A DNA stretch of 63,991 nt, filler included, from Hausera hauseri (lineage: Eukaryota), in NCBI GenBank assembly GCA_046269625.1. It is 10 parts of 10 records of this genome, joined end to end, with 100 filler letters (N's around TTAATTAATTAA, not from the genome) between each part and the next. Parts side by side here need not be neighbours in the genome. Positions count along the whole stretch, not along the records: positions 28,407 to 42,040 come from JBJURY010788756.1; 9 more parts are not named here. One strand, 5' to 3'. Every line of letters starts with the position of its first letter. Position 1 is the stretch's first letter. Under the pieces are notes generated by a model that worked only from the letters and a program-made list of their open reading frames with translations, was not told the origin of the DNA and made no database searches. Positions 28,407 through 42,040 of the stretch are shown here, in pieces. A program made the position numbers and the translations under genes.

Positions 28407-29401
28407 ATCAATTTTATATTAACGGCCATAATAGGTTTATGTTGGAACATCAAAGGTGAATCTAGGCCATGCAGTTTAATATCCAATTAGATCATATTTC
28501 GTGGGATTGGCCATTATTTCGTAACAGAAATTTTTTGAAATATTAAAATCAAAATTAGCCTAATCCTACTTTGGGCCCTACCTTGATGGCGGCACGGAAA
28601 GGATTCATTTGAATTCCCTTAATGCGGAGCGGAGAGGGGAAAAGAGGGCTGGTAGGAGTCTTAGGCTGAAGCCGACACCCTCCGCGGATCGTATGCAAGA
28701 GGGACGCGGTCGGTGGAAATTTCGTTTGAAATAACGAACGATGAAAGCACGGGAATTAGAATTAACGAGTGACTGATTGATAAAACGGTAGCAGATTCGG
28801 TAGGAGAATCGACATTCAGGGGGTTGGGATTTGTTCTTTCGAATGTATCTGGTTAAAAATGAAAAACGTAGTGAATGTTTTTAGTAATAATAATCAGACT
28901 AAGTTTTCTTTTGTTGTTTTCTTTTACTGGCGAGTTTAAAAATCTAGTTCATTGAAGTATTAGAAACACTTGGAATTTGGAAAATTTTGAAACAGTGAAA
29001 TGATATTAAGAAATCAGTTAATAATTTTCACTTATCTTCGAATATTGAAAATATTCGAATACAAAAATGGAATTATTTAAACAGTTTTCCTTATGATTTC
29101 TTTCAATTGTTGTATGTTAAATAAGTTTGGGCCTCGCCATCTCGAACCTTAATCTAATTACTCAGTTAAAAAGCAACCTTTGGGGTTACCAGATTAATAA
29201 TTAAAGTTAGTTGACCTTATGGAGTTAGGTCTGCCAGGAGGTGCACTGGCGTCACCTTTCCTTATTTATCAGGTTTTATATAATCGTCCTGAAGGCATTA
29301 ATACCAAAGAGGGCCCGAAGATTAGAGCAAATTTCCTATTAAAATACGCTATTTGCTTTAGTTAAGTCATTTAAATTAAACAATCCGTAAGTAGGTAGAA
29401 A

Positions 29402-29825
29402 ATGGGAAGTCTGCACCACCCCCAGGGGGTGTGCGAATCGATAAAATCATGGAGCACTATCGATCGGTAGTGTGCTAGGTGACGGTTCCGTTAGGTACCG
29501 TTGCTAGGCACATTTTTGCACATTTCAAAAATCGATAGCTGCACATTGCACAATTGGTTGAATCGATCGGGACAGAGTGCCAATCGATTGCGCACATTAG
29601 TTCACATTGATTTGTGCACAATGCAGATGCGCAGCACATGTTCAAGTGTGCAAAAATCAATAATATCGGTTTTCCGATATTTCAAATATTGATGATTAAC
29701 ACATGGCACTGGGTGCAATCCATTGAAAATACGGTGCACTATACGAACGTGTAATTAGAATTTAAATCGATCGAGTCGATTTCGAATAATATCAATCCAA
29801 AGTGCAACTGGTGCAGACTTCCCAT
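29402..29825. mobile_element. Non-autonomous TIR element (MITE), 17-bp TIR atgggaagtctgcacca
   Basis: Perfect inverted repeats at 29402-29418 and 29809-29825. Confidence 0.85.
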
Positions 29826-30739
29826 AGATTTTTACGTTCCAAGGAGTCAAAATTCGACAGATGTTTAAGCAGAAACAGATAGGAAGTTCGACATTTTAAT
29901 CCAAGTCTTCTATCTCAGATTTCCAAAATTCGGTGCACAACTCGAATACATATCGATTTTCACCGAATAGTATCAATTATCTTGACAGCCATAAAATTTT
30001 TGAGAAATCTGAGAGCGCAAGTAGATTTCTTATGTGTTAACGCACATATATAGCACTTTTCAGATGTGTCGCGCATATACAAGTGTGCTTTAATCAATAA
30101 TAATGGTTTTCCGATAAAACCTATAAAGTTAATTTTATCACACAATCACGTGGAAATCGAAAAATGTAAAAGCGTACACACAGAAACTAACATGTGTTGC
30201 ATCCGATTATGATATCAGATATTCGAAAACTTGAATACAATTCGAACTTTTCGAATAATTGATTTTTTTTAATAGAAGCAAAAATAAAAAAATCTAAAAG
30301 CGTAGAGGGATAGAAACCCATATATGGAAAATCCGAATATGACGTCAGATATTCGAAAAGAGGATTAAATAAAAAAGCCGAATTTTCTATCGAATTCGAA
30401 TAGCATCGTCGGATTCCCCACGTAGACCAAAAATAGGGTGTGCAAAGTATTTGGAACAGTCTTGAAATGAACAAAACATTGAAAAATTGATTAAATTCGG
30501 TCAACCGAATAGTATTTGAACAATCTGATTACACCATCAAATTCCCCATGTTAGAAAACCTTAAGTAACAAGACGAAAACAAAGGCCACGTAAGACTTCG
30601 GTTCGATTTGTTCAAAATTCCTTACAATTTAAGTTTAATTTTTATTTTCAATTATGACTACACAAATATGAGGTTGTTACAAAGGTTTCAGTATGAGTAT
30701 CAGTATCAAGGTATCTATCTGCAGTACCAGTTTTGTTCT

Positions 30740-31655
30740 ATAATAATGCATGTTATTATATCAAAACGTTAAATGAAACATGGACAAATAGCAAATTTGC
30801 ACTAGGCGAAAAGGGAGCCGAAACATCCCGCAAGATCAACTGTGCGTTTTACCCAGGAACAACAAATGAACACATTGTGTAAAGATGATTTATAAAATAT
30901 CGTAGCGATGACCAGACTTGAAGGTAACGAGCACAATGGTTAGCTTTCGGATGTTGACAACGATAAATTAAAGACCTTTGCAACCATACGCAAGAGATTA
31001 GAAAGTCAAAATGGCTCGATAAATAGGTGCCTCACGAACTGAAAGAATATCAAAAAATCGTTGATTTTAAGTGTCGACTGTCTTTTCTGAGCAGTAAAAA
31101 GGTCTTGTTTCTCGAAACGAATTATTCCGTGCTGTGAAAAGGTGGATTCTTTACTTCAATTGGTGACGCTCAGCTCAATGATTGGATAACTACCAAAGCC
31201 GAATTTGCACTAAAAGAAGATTATGGTGACTGTTTGATGGTCTTCGGTTGGTCTAATCCATCACAAGGTCCTAGATTCTGGAGAAACTACCACAGTGGAG
31301 ATGTATTGCAAACAAGTGGACAAAAAGATTCACTGTCAGCCACACATCGCACAACAGACCCCGAAAAGGTTGAACAAACAAGTCGCGAAACTTTGCCTCA
31401 CCCACTATACTTGCCGGACCTCTCGCCCACTGACTACTACTTATTCAAGTATATCCATAACTTGCTTCACAATGCCAGGAAGATGCCAAAAATGTCTTCA
31501 ACAACTTCAACGTCTTTAGAAATCTGGAGTTTCACGTTGGCAAATGTGTCCTAATTGTAATGGTTATTATTTCGATTGATAAAGTTTTGTTGGAGCCGAG
31601 GTGTGAATTTGTATGTGAAGGTGAAAAACCGCAATAACATTCGAAAAAACCTAAT
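30740..31655 (+). mobile_element. Decayed mariner element
   Basis: (W)VPHEL remnant, PHPLYLPDLSPTDYYLF, 3' TIR aaaaaccgcaataac...aacctaata. Confidence 0.85.
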
Positions 31656-31982
31656 ATTTATAATATTAGAACAGATAAACATTAAATTAGTCAGTACATT
31701 CAAGAGGCATAAGGTGGAGACACACCATCATTTCTAATTTAAATCCCACAGGACAAGAACTGAGAAACCTGTGGAAATCGGCGATGACATAGACGGAAGA
31801 TTTGAAAAAAATCGAGGCAGACGAGTGGAAAATAACTTAAATGGAGTAGTGTTTGCGATGGAATGTGTACAGAAGAACACAATAACAAATATCGTAGGCC
31901 TAAAGTCAATTTCACCCGAGGATTCATGAATTCTAATTCGATCTATGAAGTCAGGAGTTACCGAAAAACGTTTTTCATTTCT

Positions 31983-33659
31983 TCAACAAATAATAATAGT
32001 AAATATTAACATAAATATTAACTTGATCAACTGTCTGTTGCTGATACATAATTTCGACAATAAATCAGAAACGTTCTCCATATCTGTTTCCTTTGCCATC
32101 ATTTCTTCAAATTTAGGTCCAAAATTTCTAATGACATTTCTCATTTCTTCTGTTCGATGGTAACTTACAAAACCATTTTCTCTAAGCGGATAAACTATTT
32201 TCTTTGCTAAAGTAGTTCGAAATCTCGTTATATCCTCCGTTGTAGGGATTCCAGATATTTCTCCCAGAATTTTGTCGTTCGTTATTAGTTCATTGATCAA
32301 AAAGTCCAATACGTCAGATTTTGAAAACAACGCGAATAATGATGAGTCAAAGTAACAAGAATTTGCATTTCCTTGAATTCCAATATTCTTCCCCACATAA
32401 AATTTTGATGGAATACTTGGTACACGATTTGATTCTTTACTTGTAATTACATTCGCATTATTTTCTTCTCGACCTCCTTGTACAAAACGTGGATCTTCCA
32501 TAACATGGTCAATAGATGCCAGAATACCATGTCCTTGTGGACACTTAAATAAACTTTGCTTATCAAATGTACCATCGGTACCAAATTGTTGTCTGTCATC
32601 TAATTCTATTCCATAGAGATATTCATTATCTTCATTTTTACCACTCCATCTTACTGTCCCAAAAAATTCCTTCAATTCACCGTTCACTGGTTTGTAATAT
32701 GTAACAGCACAATTTAAATTGATGGAGGAAAATATTTTCTTACAATCGGGAATTTTACAAGTTTCATATGGAGTATACACAGAAATCGTATTTTCAGGTA
32801 CTATAATGGCTCTATTTTCATCAGTACGAATTAAACGGCACCTCCAAAACGTTCCATCTGAACCATAGGGTATATCTTTGAGCATCTGAATTAAAACCAT
32901 TTTCTCATTGTGAATCATTCCAAACTCTTTTATAATTCCCGTTAATTTTGATGTATCATTAAATGGTGGAATATTAACAAAGACTTTAGAACCCTGACGA
33001 AATTCATTAGATGAAATGAAACCAGTTTTATTCCACTTCAAGGGCTTCATATAATCAACGATTTTAGTGTTCAGAAAATAATGAACTTCTGTATCCAATG
33101 CGACGTTATCCAATGTCGTCACAATCCCACGTTTATTCATGCAGTCAAATCGAATATTATCCTTCAAAACTCCATCCATACTCATTTTAAATTCCATTTC
33201 CATGATTTCTTTTAGAACAGCTTCTTTAATTGGTATTTTTGACGGTTCAATGTTTTCTGATGTTTCTTCATTTGTAGGTAAACGGAAGATATATAAATGA
33301 ATTCCCGCAATTTTACAATGAATGCATTTATCAATGCATTTAATTTCGATATAATACATATCTGATATGTGATGGTCAATTTCATGATTTAATTTCGTCC
33401 TTATGTGATAAACACAATTTTCCTTTTGAGATTCTTTGATATAAACATTTGGACGCGTTATTTTACACAATTTTCTTTCTTTGATTTCTGTATTCATTCT
33501 TTTGAACTTTCGTTTAAATTCAGAGGTATTTTGCGTCCCACTTGAGATGCCAAATGTCTGTCTCAGCATTATTCTTTTCATCCTTTCTATCTTTCTGTCA
33601 TTCTCGTAATTTATCTTCATTCGTTGTTTCAACATCTTGACTTTATAAAGGAACAACAT
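31983..33659 (-). CDS. CYLD: CYLD-like deubiquitinase: CAP-Gly domains plus N-terminal half of USP domain (Cys box present, His box absent from this ORF)
   Basis: CAP-Gly motifs GSDGTF and FGTVRWSG...YGIELDD..GTDGTF...[33 protein letters not shown] matches CYLD [34 protein letters not shown] matches IVNPLRIYGYV. Confidence 0.88.
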   Translation of the reverse strand: [558 protein letters not shown]

Positions 33660-34975
33660 TTTGAAAAAACCAACAATTTATTGATATATTTCACGATATC
33701 TAATACAACTTTTCTTTTTGAAAAAACTAACAATTCATTAAAACATTTTTCAATTTTTAGAAACAGGAAGGACCTTCACAATAACATTGATGTTCACATA
33801 TTCAATCGGATAGTCATTTGCAATATATTTTTCTTCTTGATTCACAATGGTAAAAACACACATATAATAAACTTTACAATTAAACTTCGATTTTGATATG
33901 TGCTCTACTTCACCTTATACCACTATCAGTCGTCTCGACCTCTCCGGCTTGTTTGTTAATCGCCTAGGCGTGTGCATTTTGCCCCCTTCTTGAAGCCACT
34001 CAGGCTTCAATCGATTGAGAGGGTTTGTTTTGATAATAGTTTAGGAATTTGAGACAAGCCATAGAGAATTGAATAGGATTGGACACCCTTATTTTGAGCT
34101 CACCTCATTAACAGTAATGAATAACAGTTAGTCGAAATTAATTTGAATGAGATTGTAATCTTGACATCACTAAGTAAAAAAAGAAAAAAGAAAATTCTTC
34201 CGCTTCGTAATTGACTTCCATATGACTCATTTTCTTGAGAAACATAAACATGCAACAATAAGTTTCAAAAAAAACACAATTGATTTTCTTTATTCTTGGA
34301 ATCTATTCGATTATATGAGTTATCTAGAATTTTCTTAAGTATTATTGTTTATACCAGCACAATTTTCATTATTCTTTTCAAACAATAATTTGTTTCTATC
34401 AATTTTGTTGTTCAATCGGCTCATAATCCACATCGCCATACACCATCGTCCACTGTCTCCACCCCCCGTCATTTCTCCCATCTGTTGTCTGCGTCATCTG
34501 ATATAGCAATACAAGATTAGATCAAGTTAAAGGATTTATTTAAAATTCGAAGGCGTTTTAACGTTATTCATTTTTTGATAGACGAAGAAAGAGGAATGAA
34601 GAAGGCAATTCATGAAGATAGTTACAAGTTTTTTTTTGCGAGTGATTATAAGGTGATAATTTAATCGGGAAGTAAGGTTTTATCAATAAAAAATATAGAT
34701 ACGGATCGATTTTCTAAAGGTTTGTTTCAACTTAAAAAAAAACTACTATTTTCAATCCCAGTTGGGATTTAGTGAAGGGTTGTAGAGAAGTTAGAGTTTC
34801 TCTAGATTTCCGGCATTTGGAAGAAGCGATATTTACGTGAACTCATGAAATTTAGTTCACTCGATTCTTTAATCAGCAAGACAATTTTTCAGTTAATCAT
34901 AATTTCCAAAACTATATATCCCTATATTTACTTGTTATATATATTTATATAGGTTTAACTTAATTATCATCAATT

Positions 34976-37900
34976 TTAACATACATCTCTCTCTACCTTA
35001 CAAACCTTTTTTACTGGTCGTATGACTATTTTTCCATCGATATCAATGTCTACAATTCTGGTGACACCGTCCTTCCCTGGATATATTTGACTGATGGTCC
35101 CAATTTGCCATTGGTTCCTCATTAAGTTATCTTCTAGTAACCAAACTCTATCTCCGATATTAAATTTTGTCACTGTTTCATATTTCTTATGTTGGTTTCT
35201 GTAACTTATTATTATTTCTTCTCTCCATCTCGTCCAGTAATCGTTTGACAGTTTTTGTATATATCGCCAACGTGTGACAGAAGAACTTTCTCGGGTGCCA
35301 TTAATCTCGGCATTAATTTTTCCATCATATCCAGGAATGATAAAGTGATTTGGAGACAATATAACATCATCTTTTAAATCGGTCACTGTACTGGTGATGG
35401 GTCTTGAGTTGATGATACCTTCCACGATGATTAATATTGTTAACAACTCTTCCTCCGTTGTATTTGCACTTCCTAATATCTTGTATATAGCCTTTTTTGT
35501 GGCCTTTATCATGATTTCAAAAACTCCTCCAAAATGTGGTGTTCCTGGTGGGTTAAATATCCATCTGATTTCGTCTTTTTCTAATTGTCGTTTGACGGCG
35601 TATGTGTCAATTTTTATTTCACAAATTTCTTTGTTTGCCCCAACAAAGTTTGTCCCATTGTCGCTCAATATAATGTTCGGCTTTCCTCGACGGTTCATAA
35701 ATCTCAAGAAAGCCCGTATGAATGAATCTGTAGACAAATCCACAGCTAATTCTAAATGGACAGCCCTACATTTCAAACATGTGAATAGGCAAATGTATCT
35801 CTTTTCTCTAGACAAACCTCTACCTCTCTTGATCGAAATTGGGCCTGCAAAATCTATTCCCACAACGCTAAATGCTTTAAGAGGTTCTTGAAGGCGAAAC
35901 TCTGGTAATGGTGCTATCGGTTGTTGAGTTCCTTTAGCACTGTTTTTGCGACACACTTTACAATCATGTTGGACTTTCTTTATTAATTTTTTAAGTCTGG
36001 GGCACCAGTAGGTTTTACTCATCATAGCGTATATGTGATTTAATCCAGCGCAATGTTTGTGTAGTATGTGGCAATGTTTTATCAACCACTTAGTAATTTT
36101 CATTTTATCTGATAATATTATCGGATACTTGATAGACCAATCAAGATACCTAATTAATGACAATCGACTATTACTCCTTATAATCCCGTTTTCATCTAAC
36201 ATAGGGTTAGCTTGTTGAATTTTACTATTTTTTCTCACTTCTTTTCCAATTTTCAATTGACTAATTTCTTCTTTGAAGTATTCTTCCTGTTCACCCTTTA
36301 TAATATTTATGATAACATCTTCTCTAGATAATCCTTTGTTATTTTCTTTTAGTGTCTGTTCGTCAACATATTTAATCCATTCTGAATCACCTTCAATGTC
36401 TATTAATGTAGTACTTATATTTTCATATGTTTGAGTTGAAAACGTTTTTATGACTTTCTTCTCCTTCATCTCCGTTTCTTCTAAGATTTTTGGTTGTTCT
36501 GGCCAGGTTTCTTCCTCTTGTTTCAGAAATGTAGGTCCTTCCCACCATACATCCAATTTCACAATTTCTTCCACAGTGGTTCCTCGGGAGAGGTAATCCG
36601 CCGGATTCTGTTTTGTGTTAATGTATTTCCATTTTGATTTTTCACTTCTCTCTTGAATGAAACCTATTCTGTTCGCTACAAATGGTTTATAATATTTTGA
36701 ATATTGTTTGATCCAATGGAGAACGTTCATACTATCACTCCAATATGTTATTTTTTCATTCTTTAATTGTAAAATTCTTGACACCTTTATGCATAATTTC
36801 ACCCCTATACATGCCGCCATCAGCTCCAACCTAGGGATTGATATAGGTTTTATGGGGGCGACTTTTGATTTCGCTGCTATTAAATTTGTTAGAATTTCTT
36901 TGTCAGATCTATTTCTAATATAAGCTACCGCTCCATAAGCCACACTAGATGCGTCACAGAAAACATGAATTTCTTTTTCTTTGGCATTGTTTATTCCTAA
37001 CCACCTCTTTATTTTTACTTTGTTTATTCCGGGTAGTTGTACTAACCACTTCATCACGCGTAATTTAAGATGCTCAGGAATTGTTTGATCCCAGTCGACC
37101 CCATTCAACCACATCTCCTGTAGTAAACATTTTCCCACTATAGTAACAGTACTCACTAGGCCTAAGGGGTCGAATATTTTAGCCAGGGCACTTAATATAT
37201 TTCTTTTGGTCAATTTACTCTCGTAACTCCCTCCTCCGTCGAATGTTAAATAGTCTCCTATAACATCCCATTTAAGACCTAGAGTTTTTGACGTACAGTT
37301 GACTTCGCTTTTGAATGTGTATTCCTTTGCCTTCTCGTTATCTGGTATTTCGCGATATAATCGCTCTGAATTCGACAACCATTTATGTGTCTTCATTTTT
37401 GCTGTTCCCCATATTTCTTTTAAATGGTAATATAACATGATGGCTTCATCTTCCGTTTCAACGGAGTCAATACAATCATCCATGTATGTCGACTGTTTGA
37501 TCGTTTCAACTGCCCGTGGGTACTTTTCTTCAAATAATTCGGCATTCGTTTGACTTACAAGTTGTGCCAAAAACGGTGAAGCATTTAATCCAAATACTAA
37601 TCTTGTAAATTGATATGTTTCGATTTTCCCATTTCTTCTCCATAGAAATTGTAGGAATCTTCTATCATCAGGTGAAACACTGATTTGTAGGAACATTTCG
37701 GCTATATCACATATTAAAACTATTTCGTTTTTTCTCATTCGTATTAGGATGTCCATTAAATCCAATTGTAACTTTGGCCCCGGATGTAGCAACTCATTTA
37801 AACTTTTCCCCTTTACTTTCGCTGCTGCATCGAATACAATTCTAATTTTCGTAGTGGATCTATCTGGTTTCACAACTGGGAAGTGCGGTAACACCCAACA

Positions 37901-39260
37901 ATTAGCTTCCTTTTCATCTTTCTCCACTAATTCTACGTATCCTTTCTTTATGTGATCTTCAATCACCTGTTCGTAAGCTATTTTTACAGAGTTGTCTGAC
38001 TTTAATTTCTTTTCCAAATATTCCAACCTTTTTTCGGCCATGTTTCTGGACTTTGGAATTTCTTCCATTTCTCTCTTCCAAGGTAAAGAAATCTCGTACC
38101 TACCATCTTCGGTCCTATTCATCTTATTTTTTGTAACTCGAAAGATCTCCTTGTCTAAGCTCGACCAACTTTCCTTTTCTTCAGCTGAATTCTCTATCTC
38201 CCACAATCTCTTTATATCTTCATTCACTTCATCTATTCTCGTCCAATACGTTCTTACCAAATTGTTTCGTATTAAACTACCTCCTCCTCCGTTTAGAACT
38301 CCGACACAAGTCCATCCAAGAGGAGTCAATCGAGCTATTGGTTCTCCTCGTTTTCCCGAAATCTCCTTTATAGAATTGTGGAGATGTATGTAATTGGCTC
38401 CTATAATCCCATCCACACGTTCTCCTTGTCTGATTTCCGTAAATTCAACGTTTCGCAGGTGCGGCCATTTTCTTTTTTCTATTATCCAGTTTATGACTTC
38501 CATGTTTCCCGTTGGTCTACTCATGGTTAATGCGTCAAATTTCTCACTAATTTTACCATCTAAACTTTGCAAGGTCATGCAAACTCTGGTCATTTTTTGT
38601 CTTTTTTGTATCCCTCCAACTACAGCTACTGTAACGTCTTCTGTTTTTCCATTCAATTCTAACGATTGTACAATATTTTCTTCAAGAAAACTGTCCGTGC
38701 TAGCGTCATCTAATAACATGTTTACCCTGATCTTCTTTTTTCTACTGATCAGATACACTGAAACAGTTCTTAGAGCTACTTTATCCGATCCTTTGGATCT
38801 CTCTTTTTCCATATTCGTCATATAAGAATGTTTCTCAGAGTAGTTATTGTTATACGTTTGGCAAGAGTTATCACTTAATTTTGGTCTCGTATCGTCAATT
38901 TTAATGATAGTATCAGATAAATTCTTTATATCTACCTTTTCATCGAAATTTTTTGGATGATCGTTATCTCGATTTGACACATTTGAAGGGTTTACATGTC
39001 TGAATCGACAATCTCTCCCATATTTACAGTTTCCATTTTGAAAAAATATACAGCGTTTTTGGTCAACATTGGTATGACGGTTTAGGTCCTTCATTTCATG
39101 CCGAAACTTACATGAGTTACCAAATTTGCATTTACCATTTAGAAAATATTTACAATTGTTTAATGAGTTTCTTGCGTTTTTCCAATGATTAATATTCTCT
39201 TCTTTTCTTTTCTTTTCAATGTTGTTTCCAATCTTATTTGTTGACTTCTCTATATCTTCC
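34976..39260 (-). CDS. BEL/Pao pol: 2x CCCH zinc finger, aspartic protease, RT, RNase H, integrase
   Basis: LLDDASTDSF protease, CDIAEMFLQI...YMDD RT, VFCDASSVAYGAVAY RNase H, HH-CC plus GIDFAGP/SDNGTNF integrase. The 1372-aa ORF is uninterrupted and its frame is open up to the A7 run. Confidence 0.96.
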
Positions 39261-41330
39261 TTTTTTTGTGAAAAATGAACATTTAGTCAACCGTTCTGGA
39301 TGTCTGATTTTATTTGACGTCAGAACATTTATTCCGTGAACACCTTCGGCGGCGACCCGTTTCAATTCTGCCTCTTTTTCTACCCATACCTTTAATTCTT
39401 GTACATTGCGTTTCTTATTTTTGTCTTCGCGATACCTTTCCCAAGTTAATACCATAATTTCAGGCAGTTTCTGTATTAAGTTCTGATATAATAATCCACC
39501 CTCTAGCTCTATTTCTCGATCTAGATGTTTTAATCTCACAATAACTGAATCTATTAATGTAGCAAAGGCGTCTAAATCTTTAATATTGTGTACGCCGATT
39601 TTTGGAAATTCCATAATTTCCGACATGAGGGAGGCATAGTTTCTCTGATTTCCTCCGTAATAGCGTTCTAACTTTTCGAGTGCCGCTTTGTAAGAGTTTT
39701 CAGAGAGATCGTAGCTTTGAATTAGTCTTTTCGCTTCGCCGTATAAACAGTTCTCCAGTTGAATTTGTTTGTCTATGCTGGAAAGTGAAGTGTTATCCAC
39801 GCATGTTCTAAATATCTGTCGCCATTTTTCAAACTCCGCAACATTACCTCCGAATTTCGGAAGTTCCACCCTTTTTAACTTAGGTGCCAAATAATTATTC
39901 TGAGCTTTTATCTCTAATTTGTCTTCTAAAATTCTAAAATTTTTTGCTTGAATCATCCTAATTACCTCTTCATTCTGCATCTCGATGTTTTTTGATTCAT
40001 CGATTAATTCCGCTAATTCTTCTTTTCTTTTCAATTTTCTAGCAACTAATTTCAACGAGCTAATTTCTATGGATAATTTCCTAAAAATTTCATCATATCT
40101 ATTATTTTGATATTGAAAATCATCTTCTGTTAATCGACTGTTCATGAGTGATTTTCTCTGTACTGTCAACTCACACCTTAGTTCATCTTTAGTCAACAGT
40201 CTAGCCTCGAATTCTTCACTTTCGTTAGAACTCCCCCCTTTCAGTCCACAATTGACGTATATTGTCGCCCCGTGAGGGATATTTTCTATTCTATCATCGT
40301 TTTTCCAGTTCTTTCCATTGTAAATGATCATGTGATTATCTATCTTTATATGGTATTTCGCTGTTATTTCTTTTTGTAACATAGTAATAGTCTTTATTTT
40401 TCCAACCTCAATAACAATTTGTGAATTTTGGTTTACTTTAATAAATATTTGTTTTAATTCTTGTCTTTCAGTTCTTGTCGTCATCTCTTCTATTTTTCCC
40501 TCTTCACTTTCTTTATTATATCTATCATTGTGTCCCGTAACATCATCTATGCCTTTCTTCATAGTTACAATTTTTTTCAATTCTCCGATTTCTACGTTAC
40601 TTGAGTTATCATTCGGTAATTTTTGTCCATCTTCTTTTTCCTCGTCTCGGATGAATCTTCTACATAACTTTATACATTTTTGATCGTCACCAATTTGTGA
40701 TGTGTTCATTTTAAAGGAAGCAATCACTTCGTTCATATTATTTAGATTTTCTACGACATGTCCTTCATGGAATTCGATAATTTTATCTATTATAGTTCCT
40801 GAATGATGATCTATCAGCCAGCAATTTTCTTTCACAAAATTTATTTTGTTATAATCTAATAGAGTATTTTCATGATTTAGTAATTTATCTCCTTGTATAA
40901 TTAGCAAATTATTAAGATTTTTATTTTCACATTTATTTTTCGGGAAATGAATTTTGACAAACAGTTGGTTATTTTTTACGATATTAATTTGCCCAACTAT
41001 CTGTCGCATTACAGCTCTTAATATAGGTCTGGCGTTATATAAAAATATTAATAAGTTCTCCGCGACATTAAGTGAGATCCCAAACGTACATATCTTTAAA
41101 AATAAATGTTCAAAGAGAGATGCAATTTTTATCTTTAATCTCGTGATATTTATGATAATAGAAACGTTATTTATTTTGTTATGATGTAATTTAGTACAGC
41201 AATCACAACAGGAGGGATTGGGACAGGAGTTAGAGACAATAGAAAACAACATATATGACAATTTACAATAACCAACCTTGTTAATATTGAGCTTCATCGT
41301 CCTCCCAATCACGTTTACACTTCTCTGACC
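39234..41330 (-). CDS. BEL/Pao gag (DUF1759-type) with long N-terminal extension containing ubiquitin-like domain(s)
   Basis: LKRVELPKFGGNVAEFEKWRQIF...CLYGEAKRLI...YKAALEKLERYYG. Upstream lies QIFIK...GATIYVNCGLKGG. Confidence 0.88.
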   Translation of the reverse strand, partial: GQRSVNVIGRTMKLNINKVGYCKLSYMLFSIVSNSCPNPSCCDCCTKLHHNKINNVSIIINITRLKIKIASLFEHLFLKICTFGISLNVAENLLIFLYNARPILRAVMRQIVGQINIVKNNQLFVKIHFPKNKCENKNLNNLLIIQGDKLLNHENTLLDYNKINFVKENCWLIDHHSGTIIDKIIEFHEGHVVENLNNMNEVIASFKMNTSQIGDDQKCIKLCRRFIRDEEKEDGQKLPNDNSSNVEIGELKKIVTMKKGIDDVTGHNDRYNKESEEGKIEEMTTRTERQELKQIFIKVNQNSQIVIEVGKIKTITMLQKEITAKYHIKIDNHMIIYNGKNWKNDDRIENIPHGATIYVNCGLKGGSSNESEEFEARLLTKDELRCELTVQRKSLMNSRLTEDDFQYQNNRYDEIFRKLSIEISSLKLVARKLKRKEELAELIDESKNIEMQNEEVIRMIQAKNFRILEDKLEIKAQNNYLAPKLKRVELPKFGGNVAEFEKWRQIFRTCVDNTSLSSIDKQIQLENCLYGEAKRLIQSYDLSENSYKAALEKLERYYGGNQRNYASLMSEIMEFPKIGVHNIKDLDAFATLIDSVIVRLKHLDREIELEGGLLYQNLIQKLPEIMVLTWERYREDKNKKRNVQELKVWVEKEAELKRVAAEGVHGINVLTSNKIRHPERLTKCSFFTKKGRYREVNK

Positions 41331-41557
41331 ATCAATATTGGAGTTATTTGTATTGTTTTCATCAACGGCTCTCTCATCTCGGGGAAGATGCTCAATTTGA
41401 TAGGAGTAGTCTCGAATTTTATTCTTTCGTACTCTGTTGATCTCCGTTGAAACGCTCGATCTGAATTTTTTGAGGGGATTCAGAACCCCATAATAATCAA
41501 CAAGTGTGGTCCTAAAGAGAACCGTTAACATTCCCGTAATCATGTTAATCATTAACA

Positions 41558-41896
41558 ATTGACAAGGTAACTCGTTCCCAGATTTCTCCTTTATAAAAGA
41601 TTGAATTCTCTCTATGGCCGCCAATCGATCTTTCCAGTTGGAAGCGGAAATCTGTGTCATAAATGCCTCATCAAACATTTCAGTTCCTCGACAAATCACG
41701 TCATCATCGGACAGAAGAGACTCGGTCGGAATTTCAGGTTGAGTTGGCGCCCCTTTCGCTGATTTGGCAGGAGGCTTTTTAGTAACGGCTTTAACTGGAG
41801 CCTCCTTTTTCACCGGTGGTTTTTCGGATTTTGACTCCGCTTTTGCAGTCTGGACCGGTGGCTTCTCTACTACTGGAGCAGTAGTTGCAACAGAAT
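41558..41896 (-). CDS. CKAP5: ch-TOG/XMAP215 exon (basic linker plus start of TOG3) interrupted by the BEL/Pao element
   Basis: QISASNWKDRLAAIERIQ...ELPCQLL matches human LDSSNWKERLACMEEFQ...EMPCQAL. K/P/A-rich linker, and acceptor ttttacgacag at 41897. Confidence 0.75.
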
Positions 41897-42040
41897 CTGT
41901 CGTAAAATTTGTAATTTCTTTGTCAAGATTATTTAAACAATGTATGGTAAGAGAAACAAATTCCGAATCGCAATATTGTAATTCGGCCGAGTTTCCGTTA
42001 ATAGTAGAAATTCTAACTTTTGACTCCATGCAGATAATAT

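What the first reader, a model, noticed from the sequence alone, without database searches (positions are those of the whole stretch)
31983..41557. Candidate ubiquitin-based retrotransposon system: Ubl-GG-Gag BEL/Pao element followed by a co-oriented CYLD-like deubiquitinase ORF
Seen: on one contig and strand, a Ubl domain ending in LKGG directly precedes Gag. An intact pol follows, then, ~1.3 kb later, a 558-codon CAP-Gly + USP Cys-box ORF. No copy of the candidate 5' LTR lies between pol and this ORF. Established: DUBs cleave after C-terminal diglycine, CYLD cleaves K63 and Met1 (peptide-linked) ubiquitin chains and dampens NF-kB signalling, and pestiviruses use inserted ubiquitin as a polyprotein processing signal. 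Inference: the element may release Gag by DUB cleavage and may carry a captured CYLD for processing or immune modulation. Caveats: the USP domain lacks its His box here, and the ORF could be a neighbouring host exon.
Basis: partly seen in the sequence, partly recalled or inferred. Interest (0 to 1): 0.82.

Follow-up and report, generated by a model that had tools for sequence, protein, structure and literature searches.

The report
Ubiquitin-fronted retrotransposon beside a host CYLD exon
A BEL/Pao jumping gene here carries a ubiquitin copy ending in Gly-Gly directly in front of its capsid protein, a layout shared by a small lineage of related elements and apparently undescribed, while the nearby CYLD deubiquitinase piece is most likely an exon of an ordinary host gene.

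Summary
Everything lies on the minus strand. ORF1 (39234-42029, open to the contig edge) has three parts: an orphan leader of at least 527 aa, a 73-aa ubiquitin-like domain ending in LKGG (40233-40451), and a BEL/Pao Gag (DUF1759). An intact 1372-aa pol follows.

The ubiquitin call is weak by sequence in this copy (Pfam 18.9 bits, cutoff 25.4). Three things support it:
- An end-to-end alignment with ubiquitin.
- An AF2 beta-grasp model whose best PDB matches are ubiquitin (TM 0.80-0.85).
- Relatives. Five gag proteins carry Pfam-significant ubiquitin at the same position, and L-x-G-G is kept in 8 of 9 (the ninth has LKEG); the next residue is never proline.

These ubiquitin-bearing gags group apart from 118 gags without ubiquitin. 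I found no paper describing this.

The CYLD part is real: CAP-Gly plus the USP Cys box. It lacks the rest of the USP domain. It starts exactly where an inferred 1250-bp 3' LTR ends (polypurine tract, TG...CA, contig ends), and its codon usage differs from gag and pol. ORF3 codons 1-152 lie inside that LTR.

Verdict: the ubiquitin-GG-Gag finding is supported. CYLD capture is not (about 5-8%). DUB cleavage is inferred, not shown.

The parts
40449..42038 (-). Leader of ORF1 (at least 527 aa upstream of the Ubl), open to the contig edge. The first ATG on the piece is at 42029.
   Evidence: 0 stops in 530 codons against 49 and 58 in the other two frames; chance about 1.5e-19. No homolog by PDB, word search, Atlas or Pfam. 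The AF2 single-sequence model is uninformative, pLDDT 34.
40233..40451 (-). Ubiquitin-like domain, ORF1 residues 527-599, QIFIKV...CGLKGG. The Gly-Gly codons are 40233-40238 and the next residue is Ser.
   Evidence: Translation. Pfam ubiquitin 18.9 bits, below the 25.4 cutoff. End-to-end alignment with ubiquitin, GG in register. An HMM built from relatives only scores it 16.7 bits over positions 1-75. AF2 gives a beta-grasp with pLDDT 67-79. Foldseek top hits are ubiquitin, TM 0.80-0.85, 28-29% identity.
39234..40232 (-). Gag: a long helical (coiled-coil-like) N-terminal region followed by the DUF1759 core (39420-39854), up to the ORF1 stop.
   Evidence: Pfam DUF1759 E 9.7e-18. AF2 helices at piece residues 103-210 and 231-399, core pLDDT about 90. 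P0002 is 74% identical and P0003 44%.
39236..39286 (-). Overlap of gag and pol. Pol is in the +1 frame relative to gag, and the overlap contains a run of seven A.
   Evidence: Frame map; sequence and translation. A second CCCH finger lies in the pol frame upstream of pol's ATG. In relative P0004 the CCCH fingers are in the same ORF as gag.
34976..39094 (-). Pol ORF, 1372 aa: CCCH finger, aspartic protease region, RT, BEL/Pao marker domain, integrase, DUF5641.
   Evidence: Pfam: Peptidase_A17 8.5e-49, DUF5641 4.5e-20, RVT_1 3.7e-10, rve 2.3e-5, Integrase_H2C2. No internal stop.
34453..34479 (-). Candidate polypurine tract (23 of 27 purines, G-rich), immediately 5' of the inferred LTR.
   Evidence: Not unique: a second, A-rich purine tract lies near 33570-33605.
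33203..34452 (-). Inferred 3' LTR, 1250 bp, TG...CA, with AATAAA at 33682. Its last 456 nt (from the ATG at 33659) are an open frame that supplies ORF3 codons 1-152; the frame is stop-free from 33677.
   Evidence: Contig ends. X2 contig 11 ends at 34423, which is 34452 minus 29. X1 contig 3, coming from the CYLD side, ends at 33228, so shared sequence starts at 33199. Both fit 31-mer graph breaks at a repeat edge. At the listed variant sites in 33233-33625 all laid X1 contigs differ from the window, and they are deeper (29-62) than over the CYLD stretch (17-20). Sequence. The 158-codon stop-free stretch (33677-33204): chance 3.5e-7 against 12-14 stops in the other frames. This is an inference; the 5' LTR is not on the piece for comparison.
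32019..33202 (-). CYLD-like coding stretch (about 395 codons), most likely one exon of a host gene: a divergent CAP-Gly-like region, a CAP-Gly domain (32502-32672) and the USP Cys-box half (32073-32402).
   Evidence: Pfam CAP_GLY 1e-12. PDB: CYLD USP 2vhf 6.4e-7, and CYLD CAP-Gly entries 7owd, 7owc and 1ixd. P0001 is 55% identical over residues 403-548. Atlas nearest clusters are CYLD families, score 0.88. Translation.
31983..32018 (-). Tail of ORF3 beyond the CYLD homology, probably the start of an intron.
   Evidence: Homology to P0001 and human CYLD ends near 32016-32050. The exact donor site is not determined.

Best explanation
The piece holds most of one BEL/Pao LTR retrotransposon. Its 5' LTR lies beyond the contig edge. 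The element sits immediately upstream of, and in the same orientation as, an exon of a host CYLD gene.

The element belongs to a small lineage whose gag ORF contains a captured ubiquitin. The order is: a variable leader, ubiquitin ending in L-x-G-G, then Gag.

Most likely mechanism (inferred): host deubiquitinases that process natural ubiquitin fusions (polyubiquitin, Ub-L40, Ub-S27a) cut the peptide bond after Gly-Gly, during or soon after translation. This releases Gag with a defined N-terminus (Ser in this copy) and separates it from the leader-ubiquitin part. Cytopathogenic pestiviruses use inserted ubiquitin in the same way.

The CYLD stretch is not part of the element. The first 152 codons of the '558-codon ORF' come from the element's 3' LTR, and these happen to read in frame into the CYLD exon. 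That LTR frame may be the true start of ORF1 in the 5' LTR copy.

My rough odds: architecture and lineage 0.95; CYLD is a host exon 0.85-0.9; cleavage at GG by host DUBs 0.55.
For: Shown:
- Domain content.
- The Ubl aligns end to end with ubiquitin. AF2 gives a beta-grasp followed by a disordered LKGGSS and then helical Gag. Foldseek top hits are ubiquitin itself.
- P0003 (44% identical gag) has ...HGLKGGS in register.
- P0005, P0011, P0017, P0022 and P0044 have Pfam ubiquitin at 97, 78, 89, 43 and 29 bits directly N-terminal of DUF1759.
- Tails are LKGG, LKGG, LRGG, LRGG, LYGG, LRGG, LKGG and LKGG, with one LKEG. The next residue is S, G, M or N, never P.
- The Ub-bearing rows lie outside a 118-row clade (SH-aLRT 98) in which 27 rows have long N-termini and no ubiquitin.

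Inferred from established knowledge:
- UBL domains built permanently into proteins usually lose the diglycine. Keeping L-x-G-G while the rest drifts to 28-29% identity to ubiquitin in this copy points to selection on the scissile tail.
- DUBs cut poorly before proline.

For CYLD being a host exon:
- The rest of the USP domain is absent from 28407-31983.
- A polypurine tract, TG...CA ends and contig ends place a 1250-bp LTR between pol and CYLD.
- Third-position composition differs: CYLD T .39 / A .35, against gag A .44 / T .24 and pol A .41 / T .26.
- X1 contigs over CYLD match the window with 0-1 differences; at the listed variant sites in the LTR stretch all laid X1 contigs differ from the window, at higher depth.
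Against: - No cleavage data. In this copy the tail is GLKGG rather than LRLRGG, and several ubiquitin surface residues are changed (L8, V70, R72), so DUB recognition could be weak.
- The relatives are singletons on short environmental contigs of 1.2-4.4 kb. Their element context and hosts are unknown, and one relative (P0044) has lost the first Gly.
- The LTR is inferred from one copy plus contig ends. Depth from contigs is unreliable. A second purine tract exists.
- The downstream contig 31125-32060 has depth 5.7 against 17-20 on the CYLD stretch, so CYLD might be present in more than one copy.
- The LTR frame being in phase with CYLD is a coincidence that this reading has to accept.
Confidence: 0.6

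Rival explanations
1. The ubiquitin domain is not cut off. It stays on Gag, or on a Gag precursor, as a built-in signal. It could recruit ESCRT or ubiquitin-binding factors for particle release or trafficking, or bind the proteasome or shuttle factors to control Gag level.
For: Engineered ubiquitin-Gag fusions can replace retroviral late domains (PMC2958808, PMC3751857; found). N-terminal Ub-Gag changes Gag turnover (PMC3914991). In this copy the hydrophobic-patch Ile44 and Lys48 positions are kept (alignment).
Against: An N-terminal ubiquitin with an intact GG followed by a non-proline residue is a standard DUB substrate (established knowledge). The tail is the most conserved part of the domain while recognition-surface residues drift. 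BEL/Pao elements are not known to bud.
Confidence: 0.25
2. One reading: the CYLD-like ORF belongs to the element as a captured deubiquitinase in the env position, and it processes Ub-Gag or modulates host signalling. A softer form: the 3' LTR drives an LTR-CYLD chimeric transcript that benefits the element.
For: Same strand, 1.3 kb after pol. One uninterrupted frame runs from inside the multi-copy stretch into CYLD, with a chance of about 3.5e-7 for the LTR part being open. CYLD cuts peptide-linked (Met1) ubiquitin (established knowledge). The depth of the CYLD contigs (17-20) exceeds that of the contig just downstream (5.7).
Against: The USP domain stops after the Cys-box half, and nothing downstream on the piece encodes the rest, so as an intronless element gene it would be dead. 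A polypurine tract, TG...CA ends and contig ends put an LTR between pol and CYLD. Codon composition differs from gag and pol. No CYLD-like sequence was seen in any relative, though their contigs are short.
Confidence: 0.07
3. The locus is not an active element but a 5'-truncated or domesticated copy fused to host coding sequence. The leader (at least its first 430 residues) would be host-derived, and the long ORF1 a host-element chimera.
For: Leader residues 1-430 have third-position T above A, like the CYLD exon and unlike gag and pol. No 5' LTR is on the piece. In relative P0017 an HSP90 fragment lies in the same ORF upstream of ubiquitin.
Against: Gag and pol are both free of stops over 2300 codons. 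The leader has no detectable host homolog. Contig sets show many near-identical pol and LTR pieces, consistent with recent activity.
Confidence: 0.1

Closest known systems
BEL/Pao LTR retrotransposons (Belpaoviridae, e.g. Pao, BEL, Sinbad, Cer7-13)
   Same: Gag of the DUF1759 type, the Pao marker domain PF05380, RT, integrase and the DUF5641 tail, in gag-then-pol order.
   Different: A ubiquitin domain with an intact GG sits in front of Gag, behind a long leader. CCCH fingers occur at the gag/pol junction. I found no description of a natural ubiquitin-Gag fusion in the searchable literature.
Cytopathogenic pestiviruses (BVDV) with ubiquitin insertions in the polyprotein
   Same: A host ubiquitin coding sequence is captured into a polyprotein. 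Host ubiquitin C-terminal hydrolases cut after GG and create the N-terminus of the downstream protein (established knowledge).
   Different: Those are RNA viruses, and the insertions are recent, sporadic recombinants. Here the module is old enough to have diverged to 28-29% identity to ubiquitin in this copy, and it is kept across a lineage.
Cellular ubiquitin fusion genes (polyubiquitin, UBA52, RPS27A, FAU/FUBI-eS30)
   Same: Ubiquitin or a Ubl ending in GG is fused head-to-tail to another protein and removed by DUBs.
   Different: In the cellular genes ubiquitin is at the very N-terminus. Here it is internal, preceded by a variable leader. The leader is at least 527 aa in this copy, 162 aa in P0003, and includes an HSP90 fragment in P0017.
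DDI1/DDI2 (UBL plus retropepsin-like protease)
   Same: A ubiquitin-like domain joined to retroelement-derived protein sequence.
   Different: DDI1 is a host gene. Its UBL is a permanent domain and is joined to a protease rather than to Gag (knowledge; PMC7072860 seen).
CYLD (CAP-Gly plus USP deubiquitinase)
   Same: The neighbouring ORF has CAP-Gly followed by a Cys box, [13 protein letters not shown], that aligns with human and zebrafish CYLD structures.
   Different: Only the N-terminal half of the USP domain is present on the piece. The sequence is very divergent (31.6 bits to 2vhf).

Membership tests
BEL/Pao LTR retrotransposon | Gag of the DUF1759 type | tested here: met
   PF03564, E 9.7e-18, 65 bits against a 25.4 cutoff.
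BEL/Pao LTR retrotransposon | Pol with the Pao marker domain (PF05380), RT, integrase and DUF5641 | tested here: met
   166, 40.3, 25 and 72 bits. rve (25 against 32.6) and Integrase_H2C2 are below their cutoffs but in the expected order.
BEL/Pao LTR retrotransposon | Two long terminal repeats with target-site duplication | tested here: inconclusive
   No repeat pair on the piece. The 3' LTR at 33203-34452 is inferred from the polypurine tract, TG...CA ends and contig ends. The 5' LTR lies beyond the contig edge.
Ubiquitin (cleavable type, C-terminal diglycine) | Beta-grasp fold most similar to ubiquitin | tested here: met
   AF2 model pLDDT 67-79 over the domain. Foldseek top 50 hits are almost all ubiquitin chains, TM 0.74-0.85 for single-ubiquitin chains.
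Ubiquitin (cleavable type, C-terminal diglycine) | Sequence match at the curated threshold | tested here: not met
   The window copy scores 18.9 bits against the 25.4 cutoff. Five relatives at the homologous position score 29-97 bits. So the window domain is a diverged descendant, not a canonical ubiquitin.
Ubiquitin (cleavable type, C-terminal diglycine) | L-x-G-G tail in register, followed by a non-proline residue | tested here: met
   The window has LKGG followed by S. The tail is kept in 8 of 9 lineage members.
Ubiquitin (cleavable type, C-terminal diglycine) | Actual cleavage after GG by a deubiquitinase | not testable with these tools
   Needs expression and protein analysis.
CYLD deubiquitinase | CAP-Gly domain(s) N-terminal to a USP domain with the catalytic Cys box | tested here: met
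   CAP_GLY E 3e-12. Cys box aligned to 2vhf residues 4-102, E 6.4e-7. The best CAP-Gly PDB hits are CYLD's own.
CYLD deubiquitinase | Complete USP core with the His box | tested here: not met
   tblastn with P0001, which has the C-terminal half, finds nothing in 28407-31983. The rest is presumably on exons beyond the piece.
   The inferred 3' LTR lies between pol and CYLD, which argues against this. The LTR is not confirmed by a second copy.
Scans of related loci found nothing. Only contigs of two runs could be laid.

The most novel reading that the evidence does not exclude
The element and CYLD are functionally coupled. Either this family carries the CYLD front half, or the 3' LTR's open frame makes an LTR-initiated chimeric CYLD. 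In both cases a Met1-linkage-competent DUB would act on the element's own peptide-linked ubiquitin-Gag junction.
Probability: 0.06. Interest if true: 0.85.

Novelty: new variant of a known kind. Interest (0 to 1): 0.55.

Why it matters
Retroelements are thought to mature their Gag and Pol with their own aspartic protease. A lineage that has kept a ubiquitin-GG module in front of Gag across deep divergence would mean that part of its polyprotein processing is handed to host deubiquitinases. That would be a natural counterpart of the pestivirus ubiquitin insertions and of laboratory ubiquitin-fusion constructs.

It would give a simple, testable dependency of a retrotransposon on a host pathway. 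It would also offer a way for elements to express extra N-terminal proteins (variable leaders, some apparently with captured host fragments) from a single ORF.

The CYLD neighbour is a caution: suggestive adjacency, but most likely coincidence.

Tried and rejected
- **Leader identity.** PDB phmmer, word search, Atlas, Pfam at E up to 5 and an AF2 single-sequence model (pLDDT 34) gave nothing. My impression of a TOG-like motif near leader residue 130 has no tool support and is dropped.
- **A second, decayed ubiquitin in the leader** (ORF1 residues about 373-394). It scores 0.4 and -0.6 bits, not significant.
- **LTR pair on the piece.** None at seed 11 or with blastn word size 7.
- **DNA context of relatives.** One alignment was too diverse to search with. 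One metagenome scan and two viral-contig scans found nothing.
- **Host identity.** A DUF1759 paper on Trichinella suggested a guess. I dropped it because the contig sets of the two holder runs are 1.2-1.6 Gb.
- **Copy number.** Reading it from contig depth gives mixed signals. I use it only together with contig positions.
- **Other scans.** tRNA and Rfam scans of the piece found nothing. The mariner-like ORF at 31234-31554 has no Pfam hit.
Full report
**Layout.** All features are on the minus strand of the piece 28407-42040.
- ORF1 runs 42029 to 39234 (931 aa). Its frame stays open to the contig edge at 42038.
- Pol runs 39094 to 34976 (1372 aa).
- ORF3 runs 33659 to 31983 (558 aa).
- Pfam finds DUF1759 (BEL/Pao gag; E 1e-17) and a sub-threshold ubiquitin match (18.9 bits, cutoff 25.4) in ORF1.
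- In pol it finds Peptidase_A17, RVT_1, rve, Integrase_H2C2, DUF5641 and a CCCH finger.
- In ORF3 it finds CAP_GLY.

**The ubiquitin-like domain is real.** ORF1 residues 527-599 (40233-40451) align with ubiquitin from Gln2 to Gly76, with the terminal GG in register. An HMM built only from the relatives' domains scores the window domain 16.7 bits over model positions 1-75.

An AF2 model made on an 11-row alignment gives:
- a beta-beta-alpha-beta-beta-beta unit (pLDDT 67-79);
- a disordered LKGGSS;
- about 100 residues of long helix;
- a confident helical Gag core.

Foldseek's best PDB matches to the model are ubiquitin chains (TM 0.80-0.85 on the target, 28-29% identity, rmsd about 2 A).

**The module is conserved in a lineage.**
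- The word search found P0002 (74% identical, gag part only) and P0003 (44% identical). P0003 has ...HGSTVQIIHGLKGGS aligned to the window's ...HGATIYVNCGLKGGS.
- A profile search of 1.84 billion representatives gave 3331 gag hits.
- Among the best 150, P0005, P0011, P0017, P0022 and P0044 carry Pfam-significant ubiquitin (97, 78, 89, 43 and 29 bits) directly N-terminal of DUF1759. P0039 and P0004 begin inside the tail of the domain.
- The nine tails read LKGG, LKGG, LRGG, LRGG, LYGG, LRGG, LKGG and LKGG, with one decayed LKEG. The following residue is S (six times), G, M or N, never P.
- On a tree of the gag core (128 rows), the seven Ub-bearing rows included in it, together with two N-terminally truncated rows and one long-branch row, lie outside a 118-row clade (SH-aLRT 98). 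That clade holds 27 rows with long N-termini and no ubiquitin. P0039 and P0044 were left out of the tree because less than 80% of their gag core is covered.

This is compatible with one old capture of ubiquitin. All relatives are singletons on short ENA or JGI contigs, so their hosts are unknown.

**Mechanism (inference).** Ubiquitin-like domains that are permanent parts of proteins usually lack the diglycine, whereas ubiquitin fusions that are processed keep it. DUBs cut poorly before proline. Both points are established knowledge. Here the tail is the best-kept part of a domain that has otherwise drifted to 28-29% identity with ubiquitin in this copy.

I therefore think host DUBs cut after GG and free Gag from whatever is upstream. 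That upstream leader is variable:
- at least 527 aa here (an orphan, but with 0 stops against 49-58 in the other frames);
- 162 aa in P0003;
- containing an HSP90 fragment in P0017.

Ubiquitin may thus act as a host-operated separator between a leader protein and Gag. The main rival is an uncleaved ubiquitin that recruits ubiquitin-binding machinery, as engineered ubiquitin-Gag fusions do (PMC2958808, PMC3751857, PMC3914991).

I found no paper on a natural ubiquitin-Gag retroelement.

**The CYLD part.** ORF3 residues 330-386 are a CAP-Gly domain whose best solved relatives are CYLD's own CAP-Gly. Residues 420-529 align with the start of the CYLD USP domain, including the catalytic Cys motif. 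The Atlas's nearest clusters are CYLD families. One database relative, P0001, is 55% identical over residues 403-548 and continues into the His-box half. tblastn finds none of that half in the 3.6 kb downstream. The ORF is therefore a front fragment that needs further exons.

**Where the element ends.** I infer the 3' LTR as follows.
- A G-rich polypurine tract (34479-34453) is followed by TG at 34452.
- In run X2 a contig coming from the pol side ends at 34423, exactly 29 nt past that TG.
- In run X1 the contig coming from the CYLD side ends at 33228. This places the start of shared sequence at 33199, four bases past a ...CA at 33203.
- Both ends are what a 31-mer assembly graph does at a repeat edge. 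That Logan uses k = 31 is my own knowledge.
- Between these points, at the listed variant sites all laid X1 contigs differ from the window, and they are deeper (29-64). The CYLD contigs match the window with 0-1 differences at depth 17-20.

This gives a 1250-bp LTR (33203-34452, TG...CA) lying between pol and CYLD. ORF3 codons 1-152 lie inside it.

That LTR frame is open far beyond chance: 3.5e-7 for the 158-codon stop-free stretch 33677-33204, with 12-14 stops in the other frames. My explanation is that in the 5' LTR copy it is the beginning of ORF1, as Ty1 GAG begins in its 5' LTR. This would also fit ORF1 being open to the contig edge. It cannot be tested on this piece.

Third-position composition also separates CYLD (T .39, A .35) from gag and pol (A .41-.44, T .24-.26).

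**Caveats.**
- Contig depth is a poor measure. The contig just downstream of the CYLD homology (31125-32060) has depth 5.7 against 17-20 on CYLD, with a break at 32060/32084. This could mean more than one CYLD copy, a polymorphism, or RNA in a run of unknown kind.
- A second purine tract exists at about 33570-33605.
- No RNA run was available.

**Verdict.**
- Ubiquitin-GG-Gag in a BEL/Pao lineage: real, conserved and apparently undescribed. It is a new variant of a known kind.
- DUB cleavage: likely (about 0.55) but untested.
- CYLD as part of the element: not supported (about 0.05-0.08). It is most likely a host exon, with the element inserted right at its upstream edge.

Noticed in passing
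window 39236-39286 (-): Gag and pol overlap by about 50 nt. Pol is +1 relative to gag, and the overlap holds a run of seven A. The pol frame already encodes a CCCH finger upstream of pol's first ATG. In relative P0004 the CCCH fingers are in the same ORF as gag. I cannot tell whether this is programmed recoding, slippage, an assembly issue or a break.
   Followed up: partly
window 33204-33677 (-): The last 474 nt of the inferred LTR form an open frame (158 codons, chance 3.5e-7) that runs in phase into the CYLD exon. It may be the start of ORF1 in the 5' LTR copy, and it could give an LTR-CYLD chimeric product at this locus.
   Followed up: partly
window 40740-42038 (-): Leader residues 1-430 prefer T over A at third codon positions, like the CYLD exon. 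Leader residues 431-527, the Ubl, gag and pol prefer A over T. The leader may have a different origin from the rest of the element.
   Followed up: partly
window 31234-31554 (+): A 106-aa ORF with a PHPLYLPDLSPTDYYLF-type motif, which recalls the C-terminus of mariner/Tc1 transposases (from memory; no Pfam hit). X1 contig depth spikes here (63 against 8-18 beside it), so it is probably a repeat remnant in the DNA downstream of the CYLD exon.
   Followed up: partly
window 32060-32084: X1 contigs break here, at the end of the CYLD homology. Depth drops from about 20 on the CYLD side to 5.7 downstream. This is unexplained: copy number, a polymorphism, or spliced RNA in a run of unknown kind.
   Followed up: no
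P0017 and P0004 (relatives, no locus): In P0017 one contiguous ORF reads HSP90 fragment (44.8 bits), then ubiquitin, then gag. In P0004 a CFAP58-type coiled coil follows gag, the CCCH fingers and the protease. These are either chimeric assemblies or host fragments carried by, or fused to, these elements.
   Followed up: no
window 29616-30359: Two pairs of diverged direct repeats (64 nt at 29616 and 30053; about 77 nt at 30154 and 30282), 75-78% identical, in the non-coding DNA downstream of the CYLD exon.
   Followed up: no
window 33659-33759 and 34262-34305: Three copies of a 44-nt motif inside the inferred LTR, two of them 57 nt apart around the AATAAA at 33682.
   Followed up: no
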